This document shows, one piece after another, positions 5,090 to 30,150 of a stretch of 64,000 bases of DNA; within the stretch, counting starts at the first letter, position 1, and each line of letters starts with the position of its first letter. The stretch is from Felis catus. Taxonomy: Eukaryota. Made by a program: the position numbers and the translations under genes. The stretch is taken from positions 14,570,001 to 14,634,000 of the forward strand of contig NC_058382.1 in the NCBI RefSeq assembly GCF_018350175.1. The letters are read 5' to 3'. A model generated the notes under the pieces. The model made no database searches and was not told where the DNA came from. It saw nothing but the letters and a program-made list of their open reading frames with translations.

Positions 5090-5830
5090 TCAAACGGAAA
5101 ATAGGGACGCGCCCTTCGACGTGCCGTTGCCCGCTCGGGGCCGTTTCGGCTGTGATGACGCTTCTGGCCGCGAGGTGGCGCCCGGCGGGGCACGGGCGCC
5201 GGGAATGACGCGTGCGCAGCGCTCCTAGGTGTATCCGTAGGATAAACGCACGCGCCGCGTTCACCGGTGCGCACAGCGCTCGCGCACACGCACTTACGCG
5301 CCCGCCCGTAGTCGCGACGTCCCGTTTTTCCAATTTTTCTGGGAGCGGCCCAGCTGACCCCGGGGTCCGAGATGTCCGAGCTGCCCCCCGACAGCGGTGT
5401 CCGGCAGACGGACGCGGCGAATGGCCACCGCGACGCCCCGCGGGCGGAGGTAGGCGGCGGGAGGCGGGAGCCGGCCCCGGCGGGGCCTGCGGAGCCCGGG
5501 GAAGGTCCGGTGGCGGCGCCCGGGGAGGCCCGCGACGCACAGGTAGCCCGAGTGTTGGCGGAGCCAGCGGAGGAAGAGGGCGCGCAGGCCAGACCCCGAT
5601 CCCGGCCCGGGAACGGCCCGGGGCTGGCTGCGTTGCCGTACCTCCGCCTCCGTCACCCACTTAGCGTTTTAGGAATCAATTACCAGCAGTTCCTGCGCCA
5701 CTACCTGGAACACTACCCGATCGCTCCGGGCAGAATTCAGGAGCTGGGAGAACGCCGCAGGAGGTTTGTGGAGGCCTGCAGAGCCCGGGAAGCAGCGTTT
5801 GATGCCGAGTACCAGCGGAATCCCCAGAGG
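5090..5830. promoter_or_regulatory. CpG island / EID2 promoter
   Basis: Very GC- and CpG-rich stretch with TGACG and GCGCA motifs upstream of, and overlapping, the EID2 ORF. Confidence 0.75.
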
Positions 5831-5935
5831 ATGGATTTTGACATTTTGACATTTACGGTAGCCCTCACTGCGTCCGAGGTCATCAATCCTCTGATAGAGG
5901 AACTTGGTTGTGACAAGTACATAAGCAGAGAATAG
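5372..5935 (+). CDS. EID2: EP300-interacting inhibitor of differentiation 2
   Basis: Single-exon 187-aa ORF containing [29 protein letters not shown]...[20 protein letters not shown]...LIEELGCDK, characteristic of EID2. Its syntenic position next to SELENOV agrees. Confidence 0.95.
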
Positions 5936-9900: not shown

Positions 9901-10683
9901 GCCAGAGATCTACTTTCGGAACATTCATTTAGGGGCAAACAATATTCTTTTGGTTTAAATATTTATTTTTTTGAGGGCGAGCACGCGCGAGCCAGCGTGG
10001 GCAGGGGAGGGGCCGAAGAGGGGGGTGGAGGTTTTGAAGTGGGCTCTGTGCTGAAGCCAGATCAGGACCTGAGCGGAAGTTGGACCTTAACCCACTGAGC
10101 CACCCGGACGCCCTCCTACGGTTATTTTTATAGTCCCCACCATGATGAAGTAGTTACTGATAATGCACGATCTTCGTGTGCCTCGAGTGATCCTTATTTA
10201 CAAATGAGGTATAAGCCTTTTGATGTGCTTCTGGATGTCTGTCTTTTTTGTTTTTTCTTTCAGTAGGCTTCCCGCCCAGCACAGAGCCCACCTGAGCTGA
10301 GGAGTGGCCGGGTGGCTCGATCAGTGTCCCAACTCCTGATTTCAGATCAGGTCATGATCCCAGGGTTGTGGGATCGAGCCCCACATCGGGCTCTGAGCTG
10401 AGCAAGGAATCTGCTTGGGATTTTCTCTCTCTCTTCCCGCCTCCACCCCCTCCTCAGCCTCTCACCCTCTTCAAAACAAATAAACAAACTTAAAAAAAAA
10501 AAAAAAAAAAAAAAGGCCTGAGCTGAGACCAAGAGTCTGACACTTAACTGACTGAACCACTCAGGCGCCGCCCCCCCCCCCCCCAGCTTTTATTTAAGGA
10601 TGTTCGTAGAAGTGTTCCCTAAGTGTCATTTTCTTGTGCACTATTTGTTAGTTTTAGAGTTTTTTTGTTGTTGTTGTTTTGTT

Positions 10684-10902
10684 TTTTTTAATTTTTTTTT
10701 CAACGTTTATTTATTTTTGGGACAGAGAGAGACAGAGCATGAATGGGGGAGGGGCAGAGAGAGAGGGAGACACAGAATCAGAAACAGGCTCCAGGCTCCG
10801 GGCCATCAGCCCAGAGCCCGACGCGGGGCTCGAACTCACGGACCGCGAGATCGTGACCTGGCTGAGGTCGGACACTTAACCGACTGCGCCACCCAGGCGC
10901 CC
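10684..10902 (-). mobile_element. Young felid Can-SINE with TSD
   Basis: Flanked by GTTAGTTTTAGAGTTT at ~10647 and ~10905. Confidence 0.88.
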
Positions 10903-12789
10903 CAGTTAGTTTTAGAGTTTAAATTTTTTTTCTTTATGTTTATTTTTGAGAGAGAGACAGAGCGTGAGCAGGGGAGGGGCAGAGAGAGGGAGACACAGAA
11001 TCCAAAGCAGGCTCCAGGCTCTGAGCTGTCAAGAGCCCAACTCGGGACTTGAACTCACGAACTGGGAGATCATGACCTGAGCCAAAGTCGGACGCTTAAC
11101 CGACTGAGCCACCAGGCGGCCCTGTTACTTTTAAATTTTAATGTTATTATAACATCATTTAAATAATTTGGAAGTTTTTCCTTTCCTAAGTTCTGGAACA
11201 CCTTAAAATCCACTGGAATTGTCCTGGTGAGGTTTGATAGCATTTCCTTTGGGACTGTCCAGGCTGGTGATTGGGGACAGTGAGGGTGAGAGTCCTGATG
11301 TCCCTTTCCCTACTTTCCCCGATGGTAAGAGCTGTAGATTTTGAGGTACTTAGAATTACAAAAGTGTCCACACTGAGTCAGAATGTAGCATTTTTCCTGA
11401 CTTTATTTTAATGTAAGTTTTTTTTCTTTTTTTTAATGTTCATTTATTTATTTTGAGAGAGGGCACGTACCAGGGGAGGGGCAGAGAGAATCCCAAGCAG
11501 GCTCCACGCCATCAGCACAGAGCCCAACAAGGGGCTCGATCCCACGAATGGTGAGATCATGACCTGAGCCGAAACCAAGAGTCGGATGCTTAACCGACTA
11601 AGCCACCAGGGGCCCCTTTCCTGACCTTCTTGATTAAATGCCTTTCTTTACACTCAGTGGTAACAGAGGGGAGTTGCTGAACTTGGAGAGTGTTATGCGA
11701 TAAATAGAAGCACGTGACCTGTAAAACTGCAGAATAGTCTTCGAGAAGCATGTGGTGGGATCGCAAGGTCGGAACCGTCTCTCTGGGTTCAGGAAGTCAG
11801 CCTGGAGTTTCTGCTTATCAGGTTACCCACAGAGGCTGCTTATTCTCCCGAGTTCTTCCAGGATCTGGCCTGAGACAGAAATTGCAGGTTTCTGCCCCGC
11901 AGGGAAGCTGAACTGGGGTTTAGAGAAAAACGAGGTTTGTTGCCCAAACAGGAAGCATTGTGATAACTCAGGTTTCCACAGTTCTAAGCTGCTTCGTCAA
12001 ACGTTGTGTCCCTTAGTTTGCCCAGAAAAGGACACTGAGGCTTAGAAGGTCAAATTGTTTTTCCAGATCCATCTGACTCCAAATCGCACCAAGGGGCAGT
12101 GACCTAACCGGGCGTTAGCCTCTCAGGAGGGCAGGGAGTGGGACCGGGGGCAGGAGGGTGAACATGAAGAGCATCACTCGTGGTGCCAGGTGTCTTGGGA
12201 TCGAATTCCGATTTTGACATCCATCTGTGAGGCCCCAGGCTTATTACTCAATGCCCGGTTTCCCATAAGTTTATGCCACCCTGCTGCTTCTACATCTTTC
12301 TGACTGTAATCTTGTAATAGAGGTGAAATATATAAGCTTTTGGAATTTCTGAGGAGGGGAACACAAGAATCTAGAGTCCTACACCAACGCACATCCTTAG
12401 AATACATAAATATTGTCATGGAAACCAAATTAAGATTTTTTTAATGAAAATCAATACATGGGGTGCCTGGCTGGGTCAGTCGGAACAGCATGGGACTCTT
12501 GATCTCAGGGTCATGAGTTCAAGCCCCATGTTGGGTGTAGAGATCACTAAAAAGAAATTAACCTAAAGAGGCGCCTGGGTGGCTCAGTCGGTTGAGCAAC
12601 TGACTTCGGCTCAGGTCATGATCTCGCGGTCCGTGAGTTCAAGCCCCGCGTCGGGCTCTGTGCTGACAGCTCAGAGCCTGGAACCTGCTTCGGATTCTGT
12701 GTCCCCCTCTCTCTCTGCCCCTCCCCAGCACTCTCTCTCTTTCTCAAAGGTAAATAAACATTAAAAATTTTTGAATTAAAAAAAAAAAA

Positions 12790-13350
12790 AAGCTTAGAAC
12801 TTTCAGCCCCACCCCCAACCTCTGGGGAAGAGGGACGGGCTGGAGGGTGTTAATCACCCATGGCCGGCGATTTGATCAGTCATGTCTACATAATGAAACC
12901 TCCATAAAACCCCTAAACAACAGTTTGGGGAGAGTCCAAGTTGGTGAGCACATTGAGTTACTGGGAGCGGTGCACCCAGCGAAACCGGGGACGTGGCGCC
13001 CCCCTTCCCGCAGGCTGGGCCCTATGTCTCTCTCCCATGTGGCTGTTCTTGTGTCTTTAATAATAAACCAGTAATGGTAAAGTGCTTTCCTGAGTTCTGA
13101 GAGTCATTCTAATGAATTCGCAAACTCGAAGAGGGGCTGCGAGAACCCCTGAATTGATAGCTCCTTGGTCAGAAGTGCGGCGACAACCGGGGATTTTGAG
13201 TGGCATCTGAGGTGGAGGCAGGTCTCGCGGGGCTGAGCCCTTAACTTGTGGGAGCTGACGCTAACTCCAGGGCAGAGTGTCAACAGTGAATTGTAGGACA
13301 GCCACCCAGTGTCCAGGGAGTTGGTTACTGGTGTAGATAAAACCCACACA
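12790..13350 (+). mobile_element. MER21-like ERV LTR remnant (5' part probably at ~12160-12430, split by SINEs)
   Basis: Contains CCTCCATAAAACCC, AATAAAC...AAAGTGCTTTCCTGAGTTCTG, GGTCAGAAGT and GGCATCTGAGGTGG, typical of MER21 LTRs (recognised from memory). Confidence 0.6.
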
Positions 13351-14939
13351 TTTGTTGTCAGGCTCATTCAGGATTAACTTCAGTTTGATTCATTCAAAGC
13401 CCGTGTAAAATCCTTTTTTGTCATTTAATGTGACGTAGCCTTGGGAGTGCTACCCCATCATATTCACATGTCCCACCCACACTCAAGGGAAGGGGGATCA
13501 TATGAAGGTGTGGGTCATTGGGGGTCACCTTAGAATTCTACCTACCATAAAAAGTAAATAATTTTAAGTAGTTACTACCTTATTATGATTTATCATATTA
13601 TGACATAGTTAAAAAAAAAAAAACATAGTTAAAGCCTCTGGCTCACTCACTGCTCTCACCTACTCACTCATCACATCCTCCCAATCCTGGGGTATTTGTT
13701 ATGATTTGGGTTTGACGGCACATGACGGAGACCCAAGATAACAGCATCTTAAACAGGGAAGCTTGCTTTTCCCTCCTGTCCATTTCTGGCAGTTCTGCCG
13801 AAGGACCCCAGGCCCCTTCCCTATTGTTGCCCCATCCTCCCTACTCAACCCCCATGGAATCATTCTGTCTCGTACCAAGATGGCGCACCATCAAATCCCA
13901 CTTCCAGACACCAGGATGGACGGCACAACCCCCCAAACTGCAGGCGTCACTTTTGCTCACGTCCTATCGGCCATACCTAGCGGCCAAGGAGGCTGGGAAA
14001 TGTAGTCTTCGGCTGGGGACTGTCAGGAAGTAGTGCCTCTGCCCCAGCGGCCAAGCCTGTGTCTTCATTTTGCAGATGGAGACACCAAGCTCAGAGTGCC
14101 GACGTCACCAGAAGGCGATGGATAAATCAAGGGCGGAAAGAGGCGAGGAGAACCTCCTTGTATCACAGCCCAAGACCAGGGCTTTTACCAGCTCCGAAGA
14201 GCCGATATCTCATCACTGATGCGGTAAGAGGCATTTAATGAAGGTGGGGAAATGCATACATTTGACGGACAAGTGCTGGGGGATCTAGCGTCCGGGTGTG
14301 AGATTGTGGACGGCGTGAGAAAATACCGAAGCACCAATCCTGAACCCTGCCTTCCCCCCGTGCTCCTGCCCGGGCCACCCAGTGTGGTGGGGAAACTCGG
14401 GCTCTGCAGACAGACGCGCCTGGATTCTCTGGTTCAAAGTAGAAATAGCCTCGGCGACGTAATAAGATATTGGGTCCTTGCACGGCTTCCATTCCGGCGA
14501 GCAGATGTGCCCTAAGAGGTTTAACGTTCACGCAGCTCCTGGGCTATGAAAGCCCTCTCCCGAGACTCTCACAGATTTAACTTGTTTACTCTTTTCAGCA
14601 GCCCCGAGTGAAGTGCTATTACGTTCCCCACGTTACAGAGGGAGCAACTGAGGCACAGAGCTGGGAAGTGGCAAAACCGGGAGTGGAATCCCGGCAGGGA
14701 TTTGGCTCCAGGCTCTGTGCTCTCAGTCGGTAGGTTCTAGGGTCTGCCCCGTTATCTGCACCTGCTCCTCGTCGTCAGGAACAGAAAGAGTCCAGGCTCT
14801 TGGCAAACGTGCAGAGCTTGGCTTTGGAAGCCCGGGCAGCGTGTCTGATCTCGCTCTCCAACGATCACGTAGCACCCACTGTGCCACCTGCACGATACCC
14901 ATCACCTCTTCTTCCGCTGAGCCCAACACGAGCCGTCGT

Positions 14940-15200
14940 CCTCCCCACCTCGACCCCCGACATCCCCTCCCAGGAGGAAGACAGATCCACCAGGCTGCAG
15001 GGGAGTTTGAAGTGTTTGTGAACGGACATCTGGTCCGTTTGAAGAAGGTGCTGGGACCCTGGGGGTGGGGTGGGGAGACCGACAGACAGACTGTGCCGAA
15101 AGGTGATGGCTTTGTGGGTGAGGCCAGGCTGCAGAAAACTGTGAGCATCATCGGCGAGGAGAGCAGGTAACAGGCAGTGGGCCGGCGAGCTGGAGGCGAG
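14940..15200 (+). pseudogene. Inverted partial duplicate of SELENOV (end of intron 3, exon 4, shortened intron 4, exon 5)
   Basis: Exon-4 copy at 14974-15047 is 74 nt (vs 75), has a 1-bp deletion and encodes EEDRS/QAAGEFEVFVNGHLVRLKK. A 51-nt intron remnant has lost its AG acceptor. Exon-5 copy at 15099-15170 encodes KGDGFVGEARLQKTVSIIGEESR*. Confidence 0.9.
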
Positions 15201-16341
15201 GTGAAGGGGGGGGGGGCAGGGGACAGGGGCAGGGTGCAGGCGTGGCATCACAGCAGAAGACAGGGTAGAGGCTGCCAGGAAAATCTTGCCTCCCTAGCAA
15301 AAAGAGAGTGACCCAGCAGGCAGGTCCTTCCTCACGAACCCTCTTCCGCCTGCAATAAGGTCTCCAGGGGTGGAGGTGCAACAATGAAACGACGTGTGTT
15401 AACCATGGCAGGAAAGCAATACGGGAAAACTCTGGGTCGCTGACGGCATCGTCGGACCGCCAGCCGACTCCAGCCCCGTCCCACCAGCACACGAGAAAAA
15501 CGGTGTATTTGTTGGATGGTGGAAGCCACCGGTGGCCCGGTTCGCCGTCACTTGCAGAGAGGAGCACCCCTGACAGAAACCCACTTTTTCTGTGCCCGGC
15601 CCTGGGGACTCCACATTTAAGTAGTGTTACCACGCCCATTTGACAGAGGAGGAAATTGAGGCTCCGAGAGGGGGTGTCCCTTACTGGAGGTCACGGCCAC
15701 TACATGGCAGAGGTCCCACACCTTGCGGTGACCTCCCGGCTCGTGCCCAGGGACCCCACGGCACCAGGTGCAGTGTAGGCGGCCCATCAAGGTCCGATGA
15801 ATCCCCAAATGGCCCTCCCCCAGGTCACTGACACCCGCCTCCCGACACTGCGAGTCTAAATTTTGTTTTTAATGTTTCTTTTTGAGAGAGGGAGAGAGAC
15901 AGCGAGCGAGCAGGGGAGGGGCAGAGAGAGAGGGAGACACAATCCGAAGCAGGCTCCAGGCGCCGAGCTGTCAGCACGGAACCCGTCGTGAGGCTGGAAC
16001 CCACAAACTGTGAGATCACGACCTGAGCTGAGGTCGGACGCTCAACCGACTGAGCCACCCAGGCGCCCCGCCAACACTGGGATTCTAGGACCTGTGGGTT
16101 TAGAAAGTGGGCTCCAGGGTGTAATGAAATTTGGGTTGTCAAGTGTTGGAGACTTGCCACAGTCCATATTTCCATCCCACCCCCTAAAACTGCCAATAAA
16201 ATGAGAAACTGTCAAAACGTATCCTGGGGCACCCGGGTGGCTCAGTTGGTTGAGCAACCAACTCTTGATTTCACCTCAGGTCATGATCTCACTGTTATGA
16301 GATCAAGCCCTGCATTGGGTTCCATGCTGAGCCTGCTTGGG

Positions 16342-16386
<45 letters not shown>

Positions 16387-17150
16387 CTCTCTGCCCCCCT
16401 CCCTCACACTCTCTCTAAAAATTAAAATTTTAAATTGAAAAAAAAAAAGTATCCCAAACCAGGGCATAGGAAATGAAGATGCCACAAAAGAAAGAAAGAA
16501 AGAAAGTGGGGCACCTGAGTGGCTCAGTCTGTCAAGCGTCCAACTTCAGCTCAGGTCATGACCTCGCAGTTTGTGGGTTCGAGCCCTGCCTGGGGCTCTG
16601 TGCTGACAGCTCAGAGTCTGCAGCCTGCTTCGGATTCTGTGTCTCCTTCTCTCTCTGCCCCTCCCCCACTCCTGCTCTGTCTCTCTCAGTCTCTCAAAAA
16701 TAAATAAACATTAAAAAGAAAGTGACTCAACAGCACCAGGAGTTGAGGCTAGCCAACCAGGAGCAAACCTGGGGAGCAACAGGAAAACAGGGCTAGGCTT
16801 CTCTTCAGGAGTGTTCTTCTTCTTTTTTTAATGTTTATTTTTGAGAGAGGGAGCGAGACAGTGGGTGAGCAGGGGAGGGACAGAGAGAGAGGGAGACACA
16901 GGATCCGAAGCAGGCTCCAGGCTCCGAGCCGTCAGCACAGAGCCCCATGCGGGGCTCGAACCCACGGACCGTGAGATCGGGACCTGAGCCGAAGCCGGAC
17001 ACTTGAACTGACTGAGCCACCCTGATGCCCAGGATTAGGCTTCTCTCCAAACCTGCCCTTCCTTCCCCTCCCCACCGCCTCCCTTCTCACCTCAGGAGAC
17101 AGTGTGGCAACATTAGACGAGGTCAGGCCAGAACAGAGAGGCAGATTGTA

Positions 17151-17257
17151 TTTATTTCCGTTTTCACCCCTCCCCGACTCACCCCAGCCCCAGCTCCCAT
17201 CAGAAAAGGACCTGACTTGGCAACATTTCAGCCCTTCCCGGCATCCTGCTGAGGCTC
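17151..17257 (-). promoter_or_regulatory. SELENOV: SELENOV terminal 3'-UTR exon with SECIS-like hairpin (non-canonical core) and poly(A) signal
   Basis: Acceptor ...tttcag at 17258-17259. Then ATGC-C-GGGAAGGGC-TG-AAA-TGTTGCCAAGTCAG-GTCCTTTTC-TGAT, where GGGAAGGGC pairs with GTCCTTTTC. AATAAA at 17151-17156. Confidence 0.85.
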
Positions 17258-17329
17258 CTGAAACGGAGAGGAGAGAGAAAATACTTTAAAACATCAAGAG
17301 CGATGACAGCAACACTATAAAAATAATAG

Positions 17330-17820
17330 CATTTATACAGTGTTTGCTCTGTGTCAGGCACCATCCCAACGCTCCCCACTCTAGTCTCCTTGCCATTTCT
17401 CAAACACGCCAGACACATTCCTACCCCAGGGCCTGTGCACTTGCTGCTCCCTCTGCCGGCTATATTTTCCATAGATAACCCCAGATATCCGCACGACTCA
17501 ACCCCTTCCTTCTTTCAACTGTTTACTTACCATCTTCCCAATAAGGTCTTCCCCGACCACTCAAGTTAGGATTGCAAAAAACTCCCAGCAGTACCCACCC
17601 CCGCTCCTTTCCTGCTTTATTTTCTTCTCAGCACTTATCTCCACCTTCTATTTGCCTATGTGTCTTGTTCTTGTCTGTCCCCACCACTAGAATGTCAGCT
17701 TCACTAGGGCAGGAGTTCGCATCTGTTTTGTTCATGGCCGTATCATCCCCAGGACCTAGCACAGTATCCAACACAGAGTAAGCACTCAGCAAATATTTGT
17801 TGGATAAAGTGAAATCCAAG
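17330..17820 (+). mobile_element. L2 3'-end fragment
   Basis: Ends in the L2-type GTAAGCACTCAGCAAATATTTGTTGGATAA. Similar L2 remnants lie at ~22130-22720, ~32760-33240 and ~54170-54600. Confidence 0.6.
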
Positions 17821-20075
17821 GAGGTAACGGCTACCATGGTTTCTGCTTGCCAGAGGAGAAGACCAAGGCAGAGAGAGGTGAAGGCATCTGCCTGAAGTCA
17901 CACAGCCAGTAAAATAGGGATTTGAAGCCAGACAATACTGGCGTAACCATTGTCTATCCTTCCGTTTTTTAATACAGTTGATTGTCGTTCTTGTCCACCC
18001 AAAGCTCTCTCCCCATCATCCCTCCCCATGGGCTTAGGGAGACCAACTCCATTCCCAGTTGGAATAGCCACATGACTCAAGACTGGCCAATGAGAGCTCC
18101 GTGTTCCCTTGGGCCTCGGTGATTGGTTCAGGGATGAACATGTGACCTAATCCAGGCCAATAGGGATTTACGCCACCAAGATAGGGAGCCTCTCTGAAAA
18201 TAAAGTTAGCCCAGGGAAAAAGCAGAACACAGAGTAAGGGAGGGTCAGATTCTCAATGCCAACATTTTGCTGCCTGGATCAAGCCATTCCTGAAGCTAAT
18301 TAGCCCCTAGACTTTTATTCTCATGAGCCAACTTTTTTGTTGTTGTTAAGCCAATTTGAACTGGGTTCTCTGCTGCAATAAGAACATTCATGACTTATTC
18401 CAATAACAACTGCTGTTCACTTACTGAAGAAGGGTTTTGACAAGCTCTTAATTCACATCTAACATCACCAGCTTCAGCCTTGTGTGGCTGGCTGGTGGAT
18501 CCAGGATTTGAACCGAAGTTCCTGTGACCCTGGAAGCTGCATGCATAACTACTCTGGTATTCTGCGTATTGGCAGCTGTGAGAAACAGACGTCTCCTCTG
18601 CCTCCCCTGCCCCCATCCCCAGCATGGCTGCTTGAAAACAGACCTACTAAGTGCCTGGCACATAGTAGGCATTCCAAAATACTGTCTGTAAATTTTTAAA
18701 AAACAACTAATATAATGTGGACATTGTCTGGATCCTAATTCCCAACCCACCACCTCTAAAAAGATATTTTTGAGACACTTGAGTAGATCTTAGATGCCAT
18801 TAAGACATTTTAAAATTTTTGTCGAGGGTGGGGGCGCCTGATGGCTCAGGTGATGCAGCATGCAACTCTTGATCTCAGGATTGTGAATTCAAGCCCCACA
18901 TTGGGTGTGAGCCTACTTAAAAAAAATCAATAAAATAAAATTTTTGTTGGGGGTGAAAATGGTCTTGTACTTCTTTTAAAAACTTAATTTGTTGGGGCAC
19001 CTGGGTGGCTCAGTCAGTTAGTTAAGCATCCAACTCTTGATTTCAGCTCAGGTCATGATCCCACCATTTGTGAGTTCAAGCCCCATGTCAGGCTCTAGGC
19101 TGACAGTGTGGAGCCTGCTTGGGATTCTCTCTCTCCCCCTCTCTCTCTGCCCCTCCCATGCTGTCTCTCTCAAAATAAACTTTAAAAATAAAATAAGAGA
19201 TGCCTGTGTGGCTCAGGTCATGATCCCACAGTTTGTGAGTTTGAGTCCTGCATCGGGCTCTGTGCTGACACTCGGAGCCTAGAGCCTGTTTCAGATTCTG
19301 TGTCTCCCTCTCTCTGCCCCTCCCCCGCTTGCACGTTCTCCCTCTTTCTCTCAAAACTAAACATTAAAAAAATTTTTTTAATAAAATAAAAACTTATTTA
19401 TTAGAGATGCATACTGAAGTATTTACAGGTGCAATGACGTGAGGTCTGGAATGTACCTTCAAACGCTAACATGCCAAAAAAAAAAAAAAGTGGAGAGGAA
19501 AATAGATGGAGAAAGTCGGTAATAATAGTTGACCTGGTTGACGAGCACACGGGGCTCCCTGTACGGGGCTCGCAACTAGGGTACGTGTCTAAAATTTTCC
19601 ACCAAAAAGGCGGGAAAAAAATCATAGCTTCCATTTATGTAAACGTCTAGAAAGTGCAAACTAATCTAGGAGGACAGAAAGCAGATCAGGGGTGGCCGGG
19701 GACAGGGCAGAGGGCAGGAGAAATTGCTGAAGGTGCCCTCTCAGTGGTCTTAAAAATCCAACATCTGGGGCACCTGGCGGGCTCAATCAGAAGAGCACGT
19801 GACTCTTGAGCTCGGGGTTGTAAGTTCGAGCCCCACGCTGGGTGTGGGGATGACAGAAATACATTAACGAAATGAAAATGCAAACTAAGGGGCGCCTGGG
19901 TGGCTCAGTCTGTTAAACGGCCGATTCTTGGTTTCGGCTCAGGTTGTGATCTCAAGGTTCTCATGGGATCGGTCCCCGAGTCACGCTCTGTGCCCCAAGC
20001 ACAGTTCTCCCTGATCTTAACAAGGAGGACTCACTGAGCTAGGTAGGACTGGGAGTAGGATGTTTCTGACTCCAA

Positions 20076-20203
20076 NNNNNNNNNNNNNNNNNNNNNNNNN
20101 NNNNNNNNNNNNNNNNNNNNNNNNNNNNNNNNNNNNNNNNNNNNNNNNNNNNNNNNNNNNNNNNNNNNNNNNNNNNNNNNNNNNNNNNNNNNNNNNNNNN
20201 NNN
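20076..20203. other. Assembly gap (128 N) in SELENOV intron 5
   Basis: Run of N. Confidence 1.
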
Positions 20204-20720
20204 AAAATTGAAAATCCAGGGGCTCCTGGGCAGCTCAGTTAGTTGAGTGGTTGACTCTTGACTTCAGCTCAGGTCATGATCCCGTGGGACCGAGCACCCA
20301 GGCGGGCTCTGTGCTGAGCACGGAGTCTGCTTGAGATTCATTCTCTCTCTCCCTCTGCCCCTCTTGCCCACTCACCCTCTCTCTTCTCTCTAAAAAAATA
20401 AATAAATAAATAAAAAGAAATAAAAAATAAGAATCCAGTATCGGTGGCCAATAAATGGTTGTGCATATGCTTTAATACCTTAAGACAACGTTAGCAATGG
20501 AACTTTCTGCAGTAATGGGTTCTATGTCCTACATCTGCACTGCTCAACATGTGGCTATAGAGCTCTTGAAATGTGGCTAGTGTAGCTAACAAGTGAGTTT
20601 TTATTGTATTTAATTTTAATGAACTTACCGTAAGTTGAAAAGCCGTAGGCTGTTATTGGGTGGCACAGCTTTACAACTGAAAGTGAAAGGGAGGGAGGGA
20701 GGGAGGGAGGAAGAAATGCA

Positions 20721-22058
20721 AAGCTCTTTTGAAAAAAATGTCATTGACATACACTGAGCCCTTCTTTGAGCCATGTACATTTACTACCTTAGATGAGGCA
20801 TCTCCTGGAATCATCTCAACAACCCCATTTTCCAGATGAGAAAACTGAGGTTCAGAAAAGGGTGTGGGTGACCTGCCCCGATCTTAACAGGGAGGACTGG
20901 CTGAGCTACGTTGTGAGTAGGTTGTTTCTGACTCCAAGACAGCGCCCGCCCTGTGTGCTGCGCACCCTCAGCCCCGCCTCCGCCCCGCCCACCTCGCCTC
21001 CCTCACCTCCTAACCCTCACCTTCGGCCGGTTGCCTGCTACCTTTTCCTAATTTCCTCATCGATAGTGCTCACAATCTTCTGCAGCCTGGCCTCATCCAC
21101 AAAGCCATCGCCTTTCTGGGCACAGAGGGGAAAGAGCAGGGACATGTATGTCTCCCACCCCCCTCCACCGCCGCCCCCCCAACCCAGCACCGCCCTCCCT
21201 CCCGGCCCCGGGACACACAATCATAATCACCTTCTTTGAATGGACCAGTTTTCCATCCACAAACACTTCAAACTCCCCTGTAGCCTGGGCAGATCTTTCC
21301 TCCTCCTGGGGAGGGAATGTTGGGGGTGGAGGGGAAGGTGAGAGCTCCTCTCCAAGCCCCTGGGGTCTGGGGACCCTAACTACCCTCCCCCTCACTCCCC
21401 CAGGCCACCGGCACACTCACAAAGCGTAGACAATTTGGAAATTGCAGCTCCAGACTCTTTCTCAGTAGAATGTACTGCAGGGAGGAGATGGGATCATGGG
21501 TTCACAGGATCAGAGGGTCATGGGGTCAGGGGAGGGGAAACAGGACCTCCTTCCAGACTTCCTGTCCAGCACTCCCCCCACCTCCAAAGTCAAAACTACT
21601 CACCCGAAGGCTGTAGCTTCAGAGGCCGCTGGACGCCGAGGGAAAGAGAAGGGAGACAGAGAGATGGAGAGAAGATACTCAATCAGTATCTCCCCAGGCC
21701 CAGAGGGAGCCTGTGAACACCGGACTCCGATCCCATCCCATACTGCTAGCTCACCCAAGGCAAAAAAAAACCACAACAGTCCTCTGTATGGTCCACAAGC
21801 CCCCACGGTATCTGCCCCATTGCCTCCATTCACTCCCTGGCCCGCTGCTCCAGCAAAGGAGGGAGGGAGGAAGCTCTTTTGAAAAAAATTTCATTGACAT
21901 ACACTGAGCCCTTCTTTAAGCCATGTACATTTATTACCTTAGATGAGGCATCTTCTGGAATCATCTCAACAACCCCATTTTCCAGATGAGAAAACTGAGG
22001 TTGAGAAAAGGGTGTGGATGACCTGTCCCAATCTTAACAGGGAGGACTGGCTGAGCTA
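20721..22058 (+). repeat. 188-bp direct repeat pair (20721-20908 and 21871-22058), plus a partial third copy at ~20012-20075
   Basis: Manual alignment gives 8 mismatches in 188 bp, no indels and an exact offset of 1150 bp. Confidence 0.92.
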
Positions 22059-22331
22059 GGACTGGGACTACCCTCAGCCCCGCCTCCACCCCTCCTACCT
22101 CGGAACTCCTCCTCCAACACTGCATGCCTCACCACAGGGCCTTTGCACTGGCTGTTCCCTCTGCAGAATGCTCTTATCTACATGGTTCCCTCTCTCCCCT
22201 CCTTCAGGTCTTTACTCATATATCACCTTCTCAAGGAGGCCTTTCTGACTACCCCATAAAATTGTGAACCCCCCCCATTCCTTCTGCCGTTGGCACTGAT
22301 CGCCTTTTTTTTCTTTAGTTTACTTATTTAT

Positions 22332-22363
<32 letters not shown>

Positions 22364-24523
22364 CACAAGCGGGGGAGAGTCAGAGAGAAGGCGAGACAGA
22401 ATCCCAAGCAGGCTCTGCACCATTAGCGCAGAGCCCAGTGTGGGGCTGGAACCCACAAACTGCAAGATCATGACCCGAGCCAAGATCAAGAGTCGGAAGC
22501 CTAACCGACTGCACCACCCAGGTGCTCCAGCACTGATCGCCTTCTACGATGTGAGATAATGTACTGTGTGCCATATTTATTGTTCATTCCAGCCCCCTCC
22601 ACACCAGAACGTGAGTGCCACACGGGACAGAGATCTCTGTCTTACGCACTCCTGTGTCCCTGGTGCCGAGGACAGGGCCGGGCGCAAGGTAGGTGCTTAA
22701 TAAATAGTGGTTGAATGAATGAATTAATGAATCCATGGAGTCAAAGAAAGCTAGAAAGGAGGAGAAGGGCAGAGAAAGAGGGGAAGATGAGGAAGCGGGG
22801 AGAAGGGGAGAGAGGCATTTACATCGGGAAAGGAAAAGAGACAGTGAGTTGGGGAGACAGAGCAGGAGAGACCACCTGGGCAGAAAAAATGGGGGGGGGG
22901 GTGGGGGGAGTGAGACTGGGAGAGATAAGGGGGAGAGAATGTTCTAAAGCAGGAGAGAGACATGGGGATTGGGGGAGGTCCCTGCTGTTACTGTTGTCGT
23001 GGACCCAGAAGACCCAGCTCTGGGACCACCAAAGAGAACGGAAGCCAGCCTCCTTCCGCCTCTGCACTTGCGGTTCCTCCTCCCCTTGCCACCTCGATTG
23101 CCCTCCCAACACCCAGCTTTTCACGTGGAGCCCCCTTCTCATCACCGCCTGAGAAAGGCCATCCCTGACCACCCAGTCTGGCATTCCCCCACCCCTCCCG
23201 GGCCTGGCTTTGGGTCTGCGTGGCCCAGCCTGGCCTGGCGAGAAAAGCAGGTGGCGCTGTTCAGCACTCCATCCATCCTCAGAGCAGGCCTGGCCCTCGG
23301 GGGGCAGCACACTCCAAAATGAGTAAATGAGACTGAATGAATGAAGCTCAGAGCAGAGATTTGAAGCCAACAGTTCCCCAGCCCCAGAGAAAATGATAGG
23401 TGGAGCCAAGTGTCCAACTGGGAGTGGGGACTCCCTCCCCTCACCCTATCTTCAAATCCCGGAAGCCCCAGCGCCCACCCCCTCTGGGCTTTCCCCAAGG
23501 GGAGGAAGGCAGGTGTGGCCGGGGACGCCCCTCACCAGTAGATCACTCGAATCAGGATCTTGCTGTCCTCCGGTAAGTTCTCGAAGGTGGAGGCGAAAGC
23601 GGTGGCGGAGGAGTCGGTCTCCAGGATGGGCGCGGGAAGAGAATCGGGAGTGGAATCCATCAACTTGGTGGCTGATGAGTCTGCCCTCGAGGTTGACCCA
23701 AGGGTGGGCCCCAGGAAATCAGCGGCCGTTGGAGTGAGGGCAGGAAGGGCCTCTTGGGTGACAGAGCCGAATCCATTGGCGACTGATGGGAAGTGCTTCA
23801 CACTGGGTGTGGGTGAAAGATCCTTGTCCGGCCACACAGGGGGCTCCGGAGCAGATTCTGAGGCTGGATCCAAAGGTGGGGCTGAGTTCCCTAAGGATTC
23901 CGACGCAGGGGCAACGGCTGTGATCGGGACCCGACTGGGAATGAGGTTGGGGCTGGGATCCGGGCCAGAGTCGGGGTCCTGATCGGAGTGGGCGTCCGGA
24001 CCCGGGTCGGGATCTGTACTGGAGTCAGGGTCTGGACCCGGGTCGGAGTCCCGACGGCAGTCGGGGTCTGGACAGGAGTCTCAGTCCAGACTGGGGTTGG
24101 GGTTTGGACCAGAGTCGGGGTCTGGACGAGGGTGGGGGTCCAGGCTGAGGCCGGGGTCTGGACAGGAGTCGGGGTCTGAGCGGGACTCTGGGCCCGGGCC
24201 GGGACCGAGATCCGGACGGGATTTGGGGCCCGGCCCGGGGTCAAGGTCTGGGGGGGATTTGGGGTCCGGGCCGGGATCTGGACGGGACGCGGGGCCCGGG
24301 CGGGATTCGAGGCCCGGGCCGAGATCTGGACGGGATTCGGGATCTGGACGGGATTCGGGGCCCGGACCGGGGTCTGGGTGGGATTCCGGGTGCGGGCTGG
24401 GGTCGAGGCCCGGGCAGGAGTTGGGATGCGGACCGGGATCGAGGACCTGACCGGGGTCGAAGCCCGGACCAAGGCCAAGACCCGGGCCGGTGAGGGATTT
24501 GGGGCCCGCGCCTGGTTGTTCAT
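21038..24523 (-). CDS. SELENOV: Selenoprotein V, apparently disrupted in this sequence (frameshift in exon 1)
   Basis: Exon 1 24523-23536 (MNNQAR... Pro/Thr repeats ...KILIRVIYC). Exon 2 21628-21604 (C-G-L-U-SYSLR; Sec TGA at 21621-21619). Exon 3 21474-21421 (YILLRKSLELQFPNCLRF). Exon 4 21305-21231 (EEERSAQATGEFEVFVDGKLVHSKK). Exon 5 21115-21038 (KGDGFVDEARLQKIVSTIDEEIRKR*). All junctions are GT-AG. Exon 1 is 988 nt, one base short of the phase-2 junction. Confidence 0.9.
23950..24500 (-). repeat. GC-rich degenerate tandem repeats encoding the Pro/Thr-rich SELENOV N-terminus
   Basis: Recurrent 18-nt-like units encoding (V/A)QTPTP, VRTPTP and QIPNP. Confidence 0.8.
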
Positions 24524-25261
24524 GGGCAGCAGGGGGCCGGGGGGGGGGGGGCGGGGTTGGGATCCCGCGGCGTCCTCCTTCCTTGGGGCGGGGAGAGCCT
24601 CACGCACACCAGGGTTCTAAAATGGGAGAAGACCACAAGGGGGCACTGTTACATGGTGTTCCACGCTGTACACAGGTTCTACTGCGCTGGGCCTCCAGAT
24701 CTCACCTAATTCCTGAACCCTACCTTCAAGGCAAGGAACACAGAGATTGCTCCAGCGTTCCTCTCACTATCGCTAACATTCAGGCCTTCAGTATGTTTCT
24801 TGAGTGCCTGCTGTGTGCACGGTCCTGTGCCGAGTGATTCTGGGAACAGAGCCCTGATCAGCAAACCCCTGGTCCAGTGATCAGGTTCCCTGCCCAGTGG
24901 GGGAAACATAGCCATCAGCAACCAACAACAGCCCAGTGTGGCTGGGCTGGAGTAGGGGAGGCACAGGCAGAGGGGTCAGAGACAAGGCGAGAGAGGCACA
25001 GGAGCCTGCAGAATCCCAAAAGGTGCTAGAACCAGCCTGGGGCGGAGGGGGCTCCCTGAAAAAATAACTGGGTGGTCAGGAGAAAACTAAAAATAATAAC
25101 TAGCAAAAATAACAAGAGTTTGCAGTTACACAGTGCTAAGTGCTACACATATAAATAACCACAGCTAGTAAGTGGCACAGCCAGGATTCAAATGGAAACT
25201 GTCAGGCTCCAGAATGCTGGTACTTAACCACTCTGCAAATGGCCCCATCGCCCTGTGAGCT

Positions 25262-25294
<33 letters not shown>

Positions 25295-25592
25295 CGGGAC
25301 TTACTTGCCTCTTTCACTGCTGAGTCCCCTGCTCCCAGAATAAGAGCTGGCATGTTCATGGGAGGTCCACAGTAGGTGTTTCATAAATATTTACCTTTTT
25401 AAAAACAAGTTTTAACACTCACATGAAATTGGAAAAACAGTGTATAGAATCCTGTAGGGGTCTCTGGGTGGCTCAGTCGGTTAAGCATCTGACTCTTCAT
25501 TTCGGCTCAGGTCACAATCTCGAGGTTCGTGAGAGCCTGCATTGGGCTCTCGAGTGGAACCTACTTTGGACTCTCTCTCTGCCCCTGCCCTG

Positions 25593-25624
<32 letters not shown>

Positions 25625-28600
25625 AAATAAGCTATAAAAAAAAATTTTTTTTTAAGAATCCTGTATTAACTTCCATCCAGCTTTCCCCAATAATAGCATC
25701 ATATGTAACTACAGTACCTTGTCAAAACCAGGACTCTGACACTGGTCCAATACTATTAGGTCAGGTACAGACCTTATGTTGAATCATGGAAGAGTTTTAA
25801 AAGGAGAGTCATGGGGCACCTGGGTGGCTCAGTTGGTTGAGCGTCCAACTCTTGATTTTGGCTCCGTTCATAACCCCAGGGTCCTGGGATAAAGCGCCAT
25901 GCTCAGCAGAGCCCCTTGGAATTCTCTCTCCCTCTCCCCTGGCCCTTCTCCCCTGCTCACGCTCTCTCTCCCTCTCTCAAAATTAAAAAATTTTTAAATT
26001 TTAAATAGGAAAATCTTGAGAGACATCGAATTTTTTGTGTGATTCTATCTAAGCAAGTTTCTACCCCTCTCTGGGCTTCAGTTTGCCTCCCTGTGAAAAG
26101 GGCTTTCCTCTTATCACATAATATTGAGAACTAACACTGAGCATCTATTATCTGACAGCCTCTGATACAAAATGCTTTGTACATATTTAAAACGTGTCTC
26201 CAAGTCACCATTCATTTTTCATTTCTTTCCCTCTCTAGTTCAAGACTCTTGAAGCTTGTGAATTCTTTCTTCTGACAATTCAAATCTACTATTGAGCTCT
26301 TCTGGAGGATTTTTAATTTTAGATATCCTCCTTTTCGGCCCCAGAATTTCCATTTCTTTTTTTTTTTTTTAATTTTTTTTAACATTTATTTATTTTTGAG
26401 ACAGAGAGAGAGCATGAACAGGGGAAGGTCAGAGAAAGAGGGAGACACAGAATTTGAAACAGGCTCCAGGCTCTGAGCTGTTAGCACAGAGCCCGACGTG
26501 GGGCTCGAACCCACAGACCGCGAGATCATGACCTGAGCCGAAGTCGGACGCTTAACCGACTGAGCCACCCAGGTGCCCCTCCATCTCTTTTTAAAATAAC
26601 TTCTCTCTCTGTTGATAGTCTCTATTTGGTGCCACATGGTTTATTGCTTTTAGGGTGTTTTGTTTTTTTTTGTTTTTGTTTGTTTTTTTTTTTGAGTGTT
26701 TTTTTTTTTTAAGCTTTATTTATTTTTGAGAGAGAGAGAGAGTGCAAGCAGGGAAGGGGCAGAGAGGTGGGGACAGAACATCCCAAGCGGGCTCTGCGCT
26801 GACAGCAGGGAGCTTGATGCAAGGCTGGAACTCAGGAGCCTTGAGATCATGACCTGAGCCAAAGTCGGATGCTCAACGGACTGAACCACCCAGGCGCCCT
26901 TGCTTTTATTTCTTTAATCACAGTTGCCTTTTGCTCTCCAAACATATTTGTAATGGCTGCTTTGAAGGCTTTGTTCGCTCCCCAGGGTGGGCAGTTTCTC
27001 TTGCCTCCCTCCCCCTCCAGTATGCCGTTCTTACTTCCACACCTATCTCATATTTTTTTGTTGGGAACCGGACATTTCAGATCGCACATTATGGCAACTC
27101 TGGGCACTGGCCCCGACTCCCTGGGGTTTGTTTTCCTGGTTAGTGACTGGCTAGGTGATTTAAGTCTATTCTCCTTTCTCCAGCAAGTGTAGAGCAGGGG
27201 GGAGGGTGGATGGGGACACAGACTCAGGTATGCCCAGTTATCCTGGGCTGGTGGGTTTGGGCAGGTTCTCTGGGTCTTTCTGACTGTGCCGGGCAGGTAA
27301 GCTCCACCAACTGTCAGCTGTTTGCTCTGCAGTCCTCATTGTTTTCAACACCATGGGGGCATCAACTTTTTCAGAGACAGATCCAATCAAATTAGGGATC
27401 CTTTGAATGGTTAGCTCCCGGAGTCAGTTTGAGATTAGTTCTGATCCCAGGAAGGCTCCTCCCAGCTGTCTCTTTCCTCAGCTCTCCAGCAAACTAGCCA
27501 GACCCTACCCATCTCCTTCCATCGCTTTCCAGCACAACTTGCGCTGCTTTTGAGGCACCTTCAGGCTTGAACTCCACACTGTTGTGAACAGTCTGTTCCT
27601 TTGAGAAAAGACTTGGGAGCTCTCGGTTCTGCAGCCTGCCTTCCCAACAGACAAAATCTCTGAGCCACAGCTCTGATACTGGGGAGGGGGACAATGGTAG
27701 GCTTGGCTCAGAGTAAGCCCACTTTAGGAGCGGAGTCCTCAGCGGGGTGAGGCGGCAGCCCCAGGCCTCTTAGCTTGCCCTCTGGATGTGAACCCCCTGC
27801 CCCAGGAGCCAGGGAGGGACAGTCAGGGCTCCGGCATTCTTGGCCACAACACATCAAACACAGAGTCCCCCAAGTACGGGCTGGGCTGGAGAAGGGAGCC
27901 CCCACCTCTTGGTGGTGCTCCCCCAGAACTCAGCCTCAGCAACAAGTAGCTGGTGGCAGGATGAGAGAGACTGACGCTCTGCCCCTCCCCTGAGGACAGC
28001 CTCCAGCTTGGAGCTGGGGGCGGGGAGGGAGCCCAGGCAGGAATGGAGGAGGGGGGTGTTACTGGAGCAGGGTGGGGAGGGGGTGGGGGGGGAGGGTATT
28101 GGTTTACTTGTTACTGATTCTCTCTGTTCTCACCAAATGTTTAGTAGATTTTCTCGAATGAAGAGTTATTAATTCGCTATGTGCCTTCAGGATCATTCCC
28201 AGAGGCTTTAAACAGTTGATCTGTCATTTTGTTTTTATAATTTGCACCAGTTTGCCGGCAAGCGGGTCTGCCGAGCTCCTCCTGAGGTGAATGCCAGGTG
28301 AACTCCATACAGTCCATTTTTAAAACACAAATGGTAGCACCCTATACATTCCTTTGCACCTTGTCCCTTCCCCCCCAGTCTTGCACAAAATGCATAGATG
28401 GTAATTTCATACTAGCACATCGATATCTGCCTCGTCCTGTTAACAATTGTGTAATATCCTGTTTATAAATGGCCCCTAATTAATGTAACCAGTCCCCTCT
28501 CATCAGACACTTAGGATGTTCACAGCCTTTCGCTATTCTAAACAACCACTGCAGGGGTGCCTGGGTGGTTCAGTCGGTTAAGCATCCAACTTCGGCTCAG

Positions 28601-29859
28601 GTCATGATCTCACAGTTTATGGGTTTGATCCCCACATCAGGCTGTGAGCTGTCAGCACAGAGCCTGGAGCCTGCTTCAGATTCTGTGTCTCCCTCTCTCT
28701 CTGCCCCTTCCCCGCTTGTGCTCTCTCTCTCTAAAATAAAAACACTACAAACAACCACTGCAATACAGACACCTTTGTGCACAAGTGAAAGTTCACGTGT
28801 AATTTGTATCCTAGACACGAAACCACCAAATTGAAGGGAATGTGAATTTTTCATTTCATTTTTTTAATGTCACATATTTATTTTAAGGGAGAAAGAGAGA
28901 GGAAGCAAGCAGGGGAGGGGCAGGGGTAGAGGGAGAGAAAGAATCCCAAGCAGGCTCCACACTGTCCGCACAGAGCCTGACACCGGGCTCGAACTCATGA
29001 ACCTAACCATGAGAGCACAACCTGAGCCGAAATCCTGAGTTGGAAGCTTCAGTGACTGAGCCACACACGCGCCCGTGAATTTTTCATTTTAGAAATTGTA
29101 TTAAATTACCCTTCTGATGTTTTGTGTGATACGTCATAAACATCAGGGTTGTTTGAGGCAGCCAACACAGCTGCATTTTTGGGGTTTAGAAACAAAGCAG
29201 CACAACCACGTCCACACAAACCCTATAGCTCTTTAGCACCGAGGCGTCAGGAAGGACAGCTGCGTCCCAAACCCCGCACTCGCCGGCTCTGTCTCCGCAG
29301 TAGTTACTTCCCTCTTTGAGCCTCAACTTTCTCTTCTATAAAATGGATCCCTTCTCCTCTCACTGACTGGTTCTGTTGTGTTAAAAAAGAAAGCGCAGGG
29401 GGGGCGCTGGGTGGCTCAGTCGGTTAAGTGTCCGACTTCGGCTCAGGCCATGATCTCATGGTTTTTGAGTTGGAGTCCTGCGTGGGGCTCTGTGCTGACA
29501 GCTCAGAGCCTGGAGCCTGCTTTGGATTCTGTGTGCCCCCCCCCCCTCTCTGCCCGCCCCTGCTTGCACTCTCTTTCTCAAAAATGCAAAAAATTAAAAT
29601 TAAAAAAAGAAAAAGAAAAGAAAGCACAGGCTGGAGGGGGCGGGTGCTGGCTGGCTCAGTAGATGGAGCGTATGACTTATGATCTCAGGGCTGTGAGTTA
29701 GAGCCCCACGTTGGGTGTAGAGATTAAAAATAAAATCTTAAAAAAAAAAAAAAAGTACAGTCTCTGACGTCACTTGGGCGAAGTCACCAAACTGGGACTT
29801 AATACCCAACCAATTTGCAGTTTCAACTCCGCCGAAAAAAATGTAAGTCTTCACAGGTC

Positions 29860-30150
29860 AGTCAGGAATTTTCTGGTCAGCACCCATAAGGTGATCAGTC
29901 ACATGGACCCCCTCCATCCCCCAAAGCAAGCTGAGGTTAAGTCCCCAAGAAGACCCCCTGCCCTTCCCCTAGAGGAAGGTGACAGTGCCTGGAACAATCC
30001 TTTCTTTGATAACTTCCTTGCCCCCCTCTCCTTCCTATAAAAACCTTCCACTTTGTGCAACTCCTCGGAGCGTCCCTCTACTCACCAGACAGGAGGCTGC
30101 CCAATTCACGAATCCCTTCATAAAGCCAATTAGCTCTTCAAACTTACTCA
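29860..30150 (+). mobile_element. Solo LTR remnant (ERV1-like)
   Basis: CCTATAAAAACC TATA-like box at ~30034, followed by GCTGCCCAATTCACGAATC and ATAAAGCCAATT, typical of ERV1 LTR R regions. Confidence 0.5.

What the first reader, a model, noticed from the sequence alone, without database searches (positions are those of the whole stretch)
17195..17250. SELENOV SECIS has a broken kink-turn core (AUGA to AUGC)
Seen: the minus strand reads ATGC C GGGAAGGGC TG AAA TGTTGCCAAGTCAG GTCCTTTTC TGAT. The upper stem, apical AAA and 3' UGA are in place, but the 5' core is AUGC (17244-17241). Established: the tandem G.A/A.G pairs of the AUGA...GA core are required for SBP2 binding and UGA recoding. Inference: the exon-2 UGA (21621-21619) would be read as stop, truncating the protein at CGL and likely triggering NMD. 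This is a substitution, so it is less readily explained by homopolymer error than the exon-1 indel. It is the strongest independent sign of lineage-specific selenoprotein loss.
Basis: partly seen in the sequence, partly recalled or inferred. Interest (0 to 1): 0.85.

Follow-up and report, generated by a model that had tools for sequence, protein, structure and literature searches.

The report
Cat SELENOV SECIS with mutated core
In this cat-family genome, the RNA signal that lets the testis gene SELENOV read UGA as selenocysteine carries C where other mammals have an essential A, which should disable it, but no sequencing reads could be used to confirm the base.

Summary
The minus strand at 17256-17186 holds the orthologous SELENOV SECIS in exon 6. 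It starts 13 nt after the splice acceptor and has helix I, helix II, an apical AAA and a 3' UGAU. Its 5' core reads AUGC (17244-17241), not AUGA.

- **Ancestral state:** five of six other mammals fetched here have ATGA at this column. Red deer has ATGG. The rest of the element is almost invariant, so the C is derived.
- **No substitute signal:** I found no other SECIS-like element between the stop codon and exon 6. The 128-N gap was not examined.
- **Rest of the gene:** exons 2-5, the in-frame UGA and all splice sites are intact.

By established SECIS biology (core UGAN/KGAW; tandem G.A/A.G pairs needed for SBP2 and L30), the change should abolish selenocysteine insertion.

The base call could not be verified. 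It is a GGG run where the lynx protein implies GGGG, and all 15 public runs lack about one site's worth of exon-1 words.

If real, this would be a new case of a known phenomenon, SELENOV loss. The scan has not noted it on other DNA.

The parts
17186..17256 (-). SELENOV SECIS element (type 1): helix I, internal loop, core, helix II, apical loop
   Evidence: Rfam SECIS_1 aligns full length at 17253-17189. The MFE fold gives a 9-bp helix I and a 12-bp helix II. It aligns to orthologous elements in 6 mammals. My own scan gives 10 of 11 helix II pairs, the same geometry as camel.
17241..17244 (-). 5' core reading AUGC; 17241 is C where the ancestral base is A
   Evidence: for the sequence. One search shows ATGA in camel, bat, naked mole rat, Apodemus and macaque, and ATGG in red deer. 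In the MFE fold C17241 forms a Watson-Crick pair with G17201.
17199..17202 (-). 3' core UGAU (fits KGAW), intact
   Evidence: The column is the same in 6 of the 7 aligned species; bat reads TGAA.
17226..17228 (-). Apical AAA motif, intact, 12 nt after the core
17130..17257 (-). SELENOV exon 6 (3' UTR only); the 3' end is approximate
   Evidence: AG acceptor at 17259-17258. AATAAA at 17156-17151. Matches orthologous exons in camel, deer, bat and mole rat by local blastn, in macaque over nearly the same span, and in Apodemus over only about 90 nt covering the SECIS.
21021..21115 (-). Exon 5, with stop TAG at 21040-21038 and 17 nt of 3' UTR
   Evidence: AG/GT sites, translation; alignment.
21231..21305 (-). 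Exon 4
21421..21474 (-). Exon 3
21604..21628 (-). Exon 2 with the Sec codon TGA at 21621-21619
23536..24523 (-). Exon 1 (ATG at 24523-24521). The reading frame changes at the G run 23932-23930.
   Evidence: Lynx protein P0001 reads ..FPVG-VPITAV.. across the site.
20076..20203 (.).

Best explanation
The element is the genuine, orthologous type-1 SECIS of SELENOV, lying in the short UTR-only exon 6. In this genome the fourth base of the AUGA core has changed from A to C. In a working SECIS this A forms a sheared A.G pair with the G of the 3' GA. Together with the neighbouring G.A pair it builds the kink-turn that SBP2 and L30 recognise. A C at this position faces that G and can pair with it in Watson-Crick fashion, which closes the internal loop and removes one of the two sheared pairs. 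The predicted result is that SBP2 is not recruited and the exon-2 UGA is read as a stop. That UGA lies four exon junctions upstream of the last exon, so the product would end at ...C-G-L without the thioredoxin-like (Rdx) fold, and the mRNA would be exposed to NMD. If the base call holds for the species, SELENOV is no longer a selenoprotein there. The point change would be a very early, possibly the first, lesion of a gene that otherwise still looks intact.

Shown: the identity of the element, the derived state of the base, and the absence of a substitute SECIS. Inferred: loss of SBP2 binding, termination at UGA, NMD, and fixation in the species.
For: - Sequence and coordinates as described.
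- Rfam SECIS_1 aligns full length with AUGA opposite AUGC.
- The fold pairs C17241 with G17201.
- The core sits 13 nt after the exon start, as published for SelV (PMC3316567).
- Seven-species alignment: ATGA in 5 of 6 outgroups, and the rest of the element nearly invariant across placentals.
- A simple SECIS scan recovers the camel, bat and mole-rat elements. In the window it finds this element only when ATGC is allowed, and finds no canonical-core candidate between the stop (21038) and exon 6.
- Rfam finds no other SECIS match with an E-value up to 10 in 10000-30000.
- The exon-6 flank is single copy in the assembly.
- Literature: core UGAN/KGAW (PMC3753652). [quoted passage not shown] SELEX selects a strictly canonical G.A/A.G tandem (PMC1874613).
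- SELENOV is known to be dispensable in some lineages: it is lost in gorilla and toothed whales.
- The change is a transversion outside any homopolymer, with a second derived change 3 nt away.
Against:
- No other felid or carnivore DNA was obtainable, so fixation and lineage are unknown.
- Everything else in the gene is intact: UGA, exons 2-5, all GT/AG sites, and the rest of the SECIS.
- The assembly differs from all 15 public runs at about one site within 986 nt of exon 1, so it carries private differences or errors.
- Published surveys still count SELENOV among the selenoproteins expected in cat. The expected 24 is explained by GPX6 being Cys in Feliformia.
- Red deer has G at the same column in an otherwise intact gene. 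This could mean the position is less critical in this SECIS than assumed.
- No functional assay exists for AUGC.
Confidence: 0.55

Rival explanations
1. The C at 17241 is a base-call or assembly error, or a rare allele of the sequenced animal. The species carries the normal AUGA, and SELENOV is a working selenoprotein gene.
For: - All 15 public runs of the same organism hold 0.96 of the exon-1 words and none holds 1.00. This equals one private site in 986 nt.
- That site is plausibly the GGG run at 23932-23930, where the lynx protein implies GGGG.
- Other first-stage notes report single-base frameshifts in several genes of this assembly (unchecked).
- The gene is otherwise flawless, and the SECIS is otherwise as conserved as in species where it works.
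- Published surveys expect SELENOV in cat.
Against: - The change is a transversion outside a homopolymer, the rarest kind of long-read or polishing error.
- A 71-contig, 2.43-Gb assembly suggests modern, accurate data.
- There is a second derived substitution 3 nt away.
- A strongly deleterious rare allele is a priori less likely than a fixed change in a gene already known to be lost repeatedly.
Confidence: 0.27
2. The C is real, but the AUGC SECIS still supports some selenocysteine insertion, for example with reduced efficiency or helped by testis-specific factors. SELENOV would then remain a selenoprotein.
For: - The rest of the SECIS, the UGA and the reading frame of exons 2-5 show no decay.
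- Red deer carries another non-A base (G) at the same column with its UGA kept.
- Human SECIS elements span a very wide range of activities (PMC2761289).
Against: - The 5' UGA of the core is conserved in all known eukaryotic SECIS elements (PMC3753652; PMC2761289).
- SELEX with SBP2 selected only canonical G.A/A.G tandems (PMC1874613).
- A C opposite G favours a Watson-Crick pair.
- Intactness of the rest is also expected if the change is only a few million years old.
Confidence: 0.1
3. Another functional SECIS serves the gene, either elsewhere in the 3' region or hidden in the 128-N gap of intron 5.
For: The gap at 20076-20203 lies between the stop codon and exon 6 and was not inspected.
Against: - No other SECIS match with an E-value up to 10 by Rfam in 10000-30000.
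- No canonical-core candidate in that interval by a scan that recovers the orthologous elements.
- My alignments located one SECIS in each of the six other mammals, in exon 6, as published.
- The gap is intronic.
Confidence: 0.03

Closest known systems
Mammalian SELENOV (SelV) SECIS element, type 1, in the UTR-only exon 6
   Same: Same gene, and the same neighbours where seen: DLL3 in the bat, mole-rat and Apodemus loci, an EID gene in the mole-rat and macaque loci, and an EID2-like ORF in the window. Same six-exon layout and the same 13-nt distance from exon start to core. Helix II, apical AAA and 3' UGAU are nearly identical.
   Different: The core reads AUGC instead of AUGA. There is also an A-to-G change 3 nt on that turns an A-U pair into G.U.
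Reported lineage-specific losses of SELENOV (gorilla deletion; toothed whales)
   Same: The same young, testis-specific, least-conserved selenoprotein gene would be inactivated in one lineage.
   Different: Those losses are gene deletions or absence of the coding sequence. Here the coding exons are present and the only well-supported lesion is one base in the recoding signal. The coding- and RNA-based survey methods would not see it.
SELENON (SEPN1) SECIS point mutation causing rigid-spine muscular dystrophy
   Same: A single base change near the SECIS non-Watson-Crick core that abolishes SBP2 binding (as cited in PMC1874613).
   Different: That mutation is U-to-C at the loop position next to the tandem pairs, in a human disease allele. 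Here the A of the A.G pair itself is changed, in a non-essential gene, possibly as a fixed difference.

Membership tests
Eukaryotic SECIS element (Rfam RF00031 SECIS_1) | 5' core UGAN (usually AUGA), supplying the G and A of the tandem sheared pairs | tested here: not met
   The window reads UGCC at 17243-17240; the consensus is UGAN/KGAW (PMC3753652).
Eukaryotic SECIS element (Rfam RF00031 SECIS_1) | 3' core KGAW | tested here: met
   UGAU at 17202-17199.
Eukaryotic SECIS element (Rfam RF00031 SECIS_1) | Helix II of fixed length between the core and an unpaired AAR motif | tested here: met
   10 of 11 ungapped pairs, the same span (43 nt from core to 3' GA) as camel. AAA lies 12 nt after the core. 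The MFE fold agrees.
Eukaryotic SECIS element (Rfam RF00031 SECIS_1) | Helix I closing an internal loop below the core | tested here: met
   A 9-bp helix, 17256-17248 with 17194-17186, in the MFE fold.
Eukaryotic SECIS element (Rfam RF00031 SECIS_1) | Score at or above the Rfam gathering threshold | tested here: inconclusive
   19.5 bits against 35. The camel and bat loci, which have AUGA, also gave no hit at gathering. Only 3 elements pass in the whole assembly. The threshold therefore does not separate working from broken elements.
Eukaryotic SECIS element (Rfam RF00031 SECIS_1) | Binds SBP2 and directs UGA recoding | not testable with these tools
   Needs a gel shift or a reporter assay.
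SELENOV orthologue | Placental gene next to DLL3 and EID2, with six exons, a long Pro/Thr-rich exon 1, a CxxU motif in exon 2 and an Rdx fold in exons 2-5 | tested here: met
   Exon map and CGL-UGA-SYSLR. Best protein hits are Selenoprotein V of lynx, dog and mink, with PF10262. An EID2-like ORF lies at 5372-5935.
Unitary pseudogene / lineage-specific gene loss | A disabling lesion fixed in the species and shared, or datable, on the phylogeny | not testable with these tools

The most novel reading that the evidence does not exclude
The cat lineage (the species, or felids more widely) has lost SELENOV as a selenoprotein through a single substitution in the SECIS kink-turn core, while the mRNA, the UGA and the reading frame are still intact. 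This would be a third independent mammalian SELENOV loss caught at its first step. It would also be of a type that coding-sequence and RNA-presence surveys cannot detect. Red deer, with ATGG at the same column, might be a further case.
Probability: 0.4. Interest if true: 0.5.

Novelty: new member of a known kind. Interest (0 to 1): 0.35.

Why it matters
If the C is fixed, cats would be a natural SELENOV knock-out at the level of the recoding signal. This would bear on the still unknown function of this testis-specific protein. Current selenoproteome surveys score genes by coding sequence and RNA presence, so it would also show that they can overlook losses that begin in the SECIS. If the C is an assembly error or a rare allele, the finding is ordinary. 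It would then only warn against calling gene loss from a single assembly.

Tried and rejected
1. **Reads.** The look-up of sequencing runs on exon 1 gave 24 runs. There is therefore no read evidence for 17241. Later comparisons of the element were local scripts and alignments only. For the same reason I did not score the orthologous elements against Rfam.

2. **Felid or carnivore orthologues.** The lynx, dog and an unnamed carnivore-like SELENOV protein are not on record with DNA. The window's own frameshifted exon-1 product is not on record either.

3. **Metagenome contigs.** The beside-pattern gave two hits, both chance matches in GC-rich, evidently bacterial contigs.

4. **Second copy or haplotig.** None found in the assembly. 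Apart from the locus itself, the hits were only short fragments (40-105 nt, 73-93% identity) matching one segment of the intron query.

5. **Rfam as a functional test.** Rejected: true orthologues also miss the gathering score, and only 5 matches (3 over the cut-off) were scored genome-wide.

6. **Supplements of the 2025/26 vertebrate selenoproteome preprint.** They hold no text on cat, Panthera, lynx or SELENOV.

7. **An alternative kink-turn register.** I considered the GA of the preceding GGAU. I rejected it by inspection, because it would leave four unpaired 5' bases opposite one 3' base.

8. **The N gap at 20076-20203.** Deliberately not examined or laid.

Full report
**What is there.** Restricted to 17100-17320, Rfam's SECIS_1 model aligns over its whole length (positions 1-64) to 17253-17189. 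The model's AUGA lies opposite AUGC. The score is 19.5 bits against a gathering score of 35. The MFE fold gives a 9-bp helix I, an internal loop and a 12-bp helix II with the AAA at the top. It pairs C17241 with G17201, the G of the 3' GA. The fold energy is no better than that of shuffled sequence (z = -0.08), so identity rests on homology and motif geometry, not on stability.

**Gene context.**
- The element sits in the last exon of SELENOV.
- I mapped all six exons: exon 1 at 24523-23536, exon 2 at 21628-21604, exon 3 at 21474-21421, exon 4 at 21305-21231, exon 5 at 21115-21021 (TAG at 21040-21038), and exon 6 from 17257 to about 17130.
- Every intron has GT/AG boundaries.
- Exons 2-5 splice into C-G-L-UGA-S-Y-S-L-R... 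through to the stop.
- AATAAA lies at 17156-17151.
- Exon 6 starts 13 nt before the core. Mariotti et al. 2012 report exactly this average distance for SelV. They also describe the six-exon layout with the SECIS alone in exon 6 (PMC3316567).
- The best protein matches to exon 1 are Selenoprotein V of Lynx canadensis (95% identity), dog and mink.
- The genome is a 2.43-Gb, 71-contig assembly. Holders of the sequence include 'feline metagenome' runs, so it is a cat-family genome.

**Is the C derived?**
- Through SELENOV proteins with DNA on record, I fetched the locus from camel, red deer, a bat, naked mole rat, Apodemus and macaque. I then located exon 6 by local blastn.
- In the alignments the column of 17241 is A in five of the six and G in red deer. 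Only the window has C.
- Helix II, the apical loop and the 3' UGAU are almost invariant across these placentals.
- The window has one further derived change 3 nt downstream, turning an A-U pair into G.U, and two in the 3' internal loop and helix I region.
- The element has therefore been under strong constraint for most of its history. The core change is a recent, derived event or an error.

**Is there a substitute SECIS?**
- Rfam at E up to 10 over 10000-30000 lists no other SECIS match.
- A simple scan of my own looks for a canonical NUGA core, at least 9 of 11 helix II pairs, an apical AA or CC, and a 3' GA.
- It recovers the camel, bat and mole-rat elements.
- It finds no candidate between the stop codon and exon 6.
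- It finds the window's element only when ATGC is allowed.
- The exon-6 flank is single copy in the assembly.
In each of the six other mammals the one SECIS my alignments located is in exon 6.

**Predicted consequence.**
- The SECIS core has the consensus UGAN/KGAW and forms a kink-turn through AG-GA pairing (PMC3753652).
- Deleting AUGA collapses recoding, and human SelV is a type 1 element (PMC2761289).
- SELEX with SBP2 returned only canonical G.A/A.G tandems (PMC1874613).
- Replacing the A of the A.G pair by C removes one sheared pair and offers a C-G Watson-Crick pair instead.
- The inference is loss of SBP2 binding and termination at the exon-2 UGA. Because four exon junctions lie downstream, the mRNA would also be sensitive to NMD.
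- None of this was measured.

**Can the base call be trusted?**
- This is the weak point. The look-up of sequencing runs, queried with exon 1, listed 15 runs of one organism that all hold 0.96 of the 102 sampled words. None holds 1.00.
- One variant site is expected to remove 3.3 sampled words, and about 4 are missing. The assembly therefore differs from every public run at about one site in this 986-nt exon.
- A plausible candidate is the exon-1 frameshift. The window has GGG at 23932-23930. The lynx protein reads ..FPVG-VPITAV.., which is what GGGG would encode.
- The frameshift may therefore be an assembly error or a private allele, although I could not show that it is the missing site. It should not be counted as independent evidence of decay.
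There are thus no reads for 17241.
- From then on I kept those letters out of all search tools.
- Attempts to reach other felid or carnivore DNA failed.

**Weighing the readings.**
- For a real, species-level change: it is a transversion outside any homopolymer, in what looks like a modern assembly, with a second derived change close by. The gene is already known to be lost in gorilla and toothed whales (bioRxiv 10.1101/2025.05.29.656587).
- For an error or a rare allele: everything else in the gene is intact, the assembly demonstrably carries at least one private difference nearby, and published tables still expect SELENOV in cat. The cat's expected 24 is explained by GPX6 being Cys in Feliformia.
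- In that table two expected selenoproteins are 'missing from assembly' in cat, but they are not named.
- I put 0.55 on a real inactivating change, 0.27 on error or rare allele, 0.10 on a real but tolerated variant, and 0.03 on another SECIS.

**Novelty.** The survey papers judge losses from coding predictions and from TBLASTN against RNA databases, not from SECIS integrity. A SECIS-only lesion would escape them. I found no report of SELENOV loss in felids. If confirmed, this is a new case of a known kind of event, and an instructive one because the recoding signal would be the first part to fail.

Noticed in passing
L003:38062-38225 (red deer, SELENOV exon 6): The red deer SECIS core reads ATGG, with the next base C changed to T. 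The substitution is in the same column as the window's. The deer keeps the exon-2 TGA and exons 3-5. An extra G just before the stop lengthens the C-terminus by a few residues. This could be a second decaying SELENOV, a tolerated position, or an assembly error.
   Followed up: partly
window 23930-23932: The exon-1 frameshift is a GGG run where the lynx protein implies GGGG. All 15 public runs hold 0.96, never 1.00, of the exon-1 words, which fits one site private to this assembly.
   Followed up: partly
window 14960-15050 and 15091-15184 (+); L001:28881-28990; L003:40129-40200: An inverted partial copy of SELENOV exons 4-5 lies about 2 kb downstream of exon 6 (84% and 78% identity). Camel and red deer have a matching inverted copy in the same relative place, so the duplication is old and not felid-specific.
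   Followed up: partly
window 17148-17159 and 21021-21037: The felid exon 6 has a canonical AATAAA where camel, deer, bat and mole rat have only AATACA. The felid exon-5 UTR lacks 4 nt that are present in camel, deer and bat (mole rat also differs here).
   Followed up: no
L004:11600-11700 (naked mole rat exon 4): Relative to all the other species there is an extra A inside exon 4. This fits the record's 'LOW QUALITY PROTEIN' label.
   Followed up: no
window 16629-16909: A roughly 280-nt stretch matches Rfam MIR7533 on both strands at 75-77 bits, far below the gathering score of 230. A weaker match lies at 28675-28949 (+ strand only). It looks like a palindromic repeat next to a carnivore SINE, not a microRNA gene.
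   Followed up: no
G000:C39:9526595-9526662 (-): A strong SECIS_1 match (45.6 bits) lies about 5 Mb from the window on the same contig. It may be the SECIS of the paralogue SELENOW. Only 3 SECIS matches pass the Rfam cut-off in the whole assembly.
   Followed up: no
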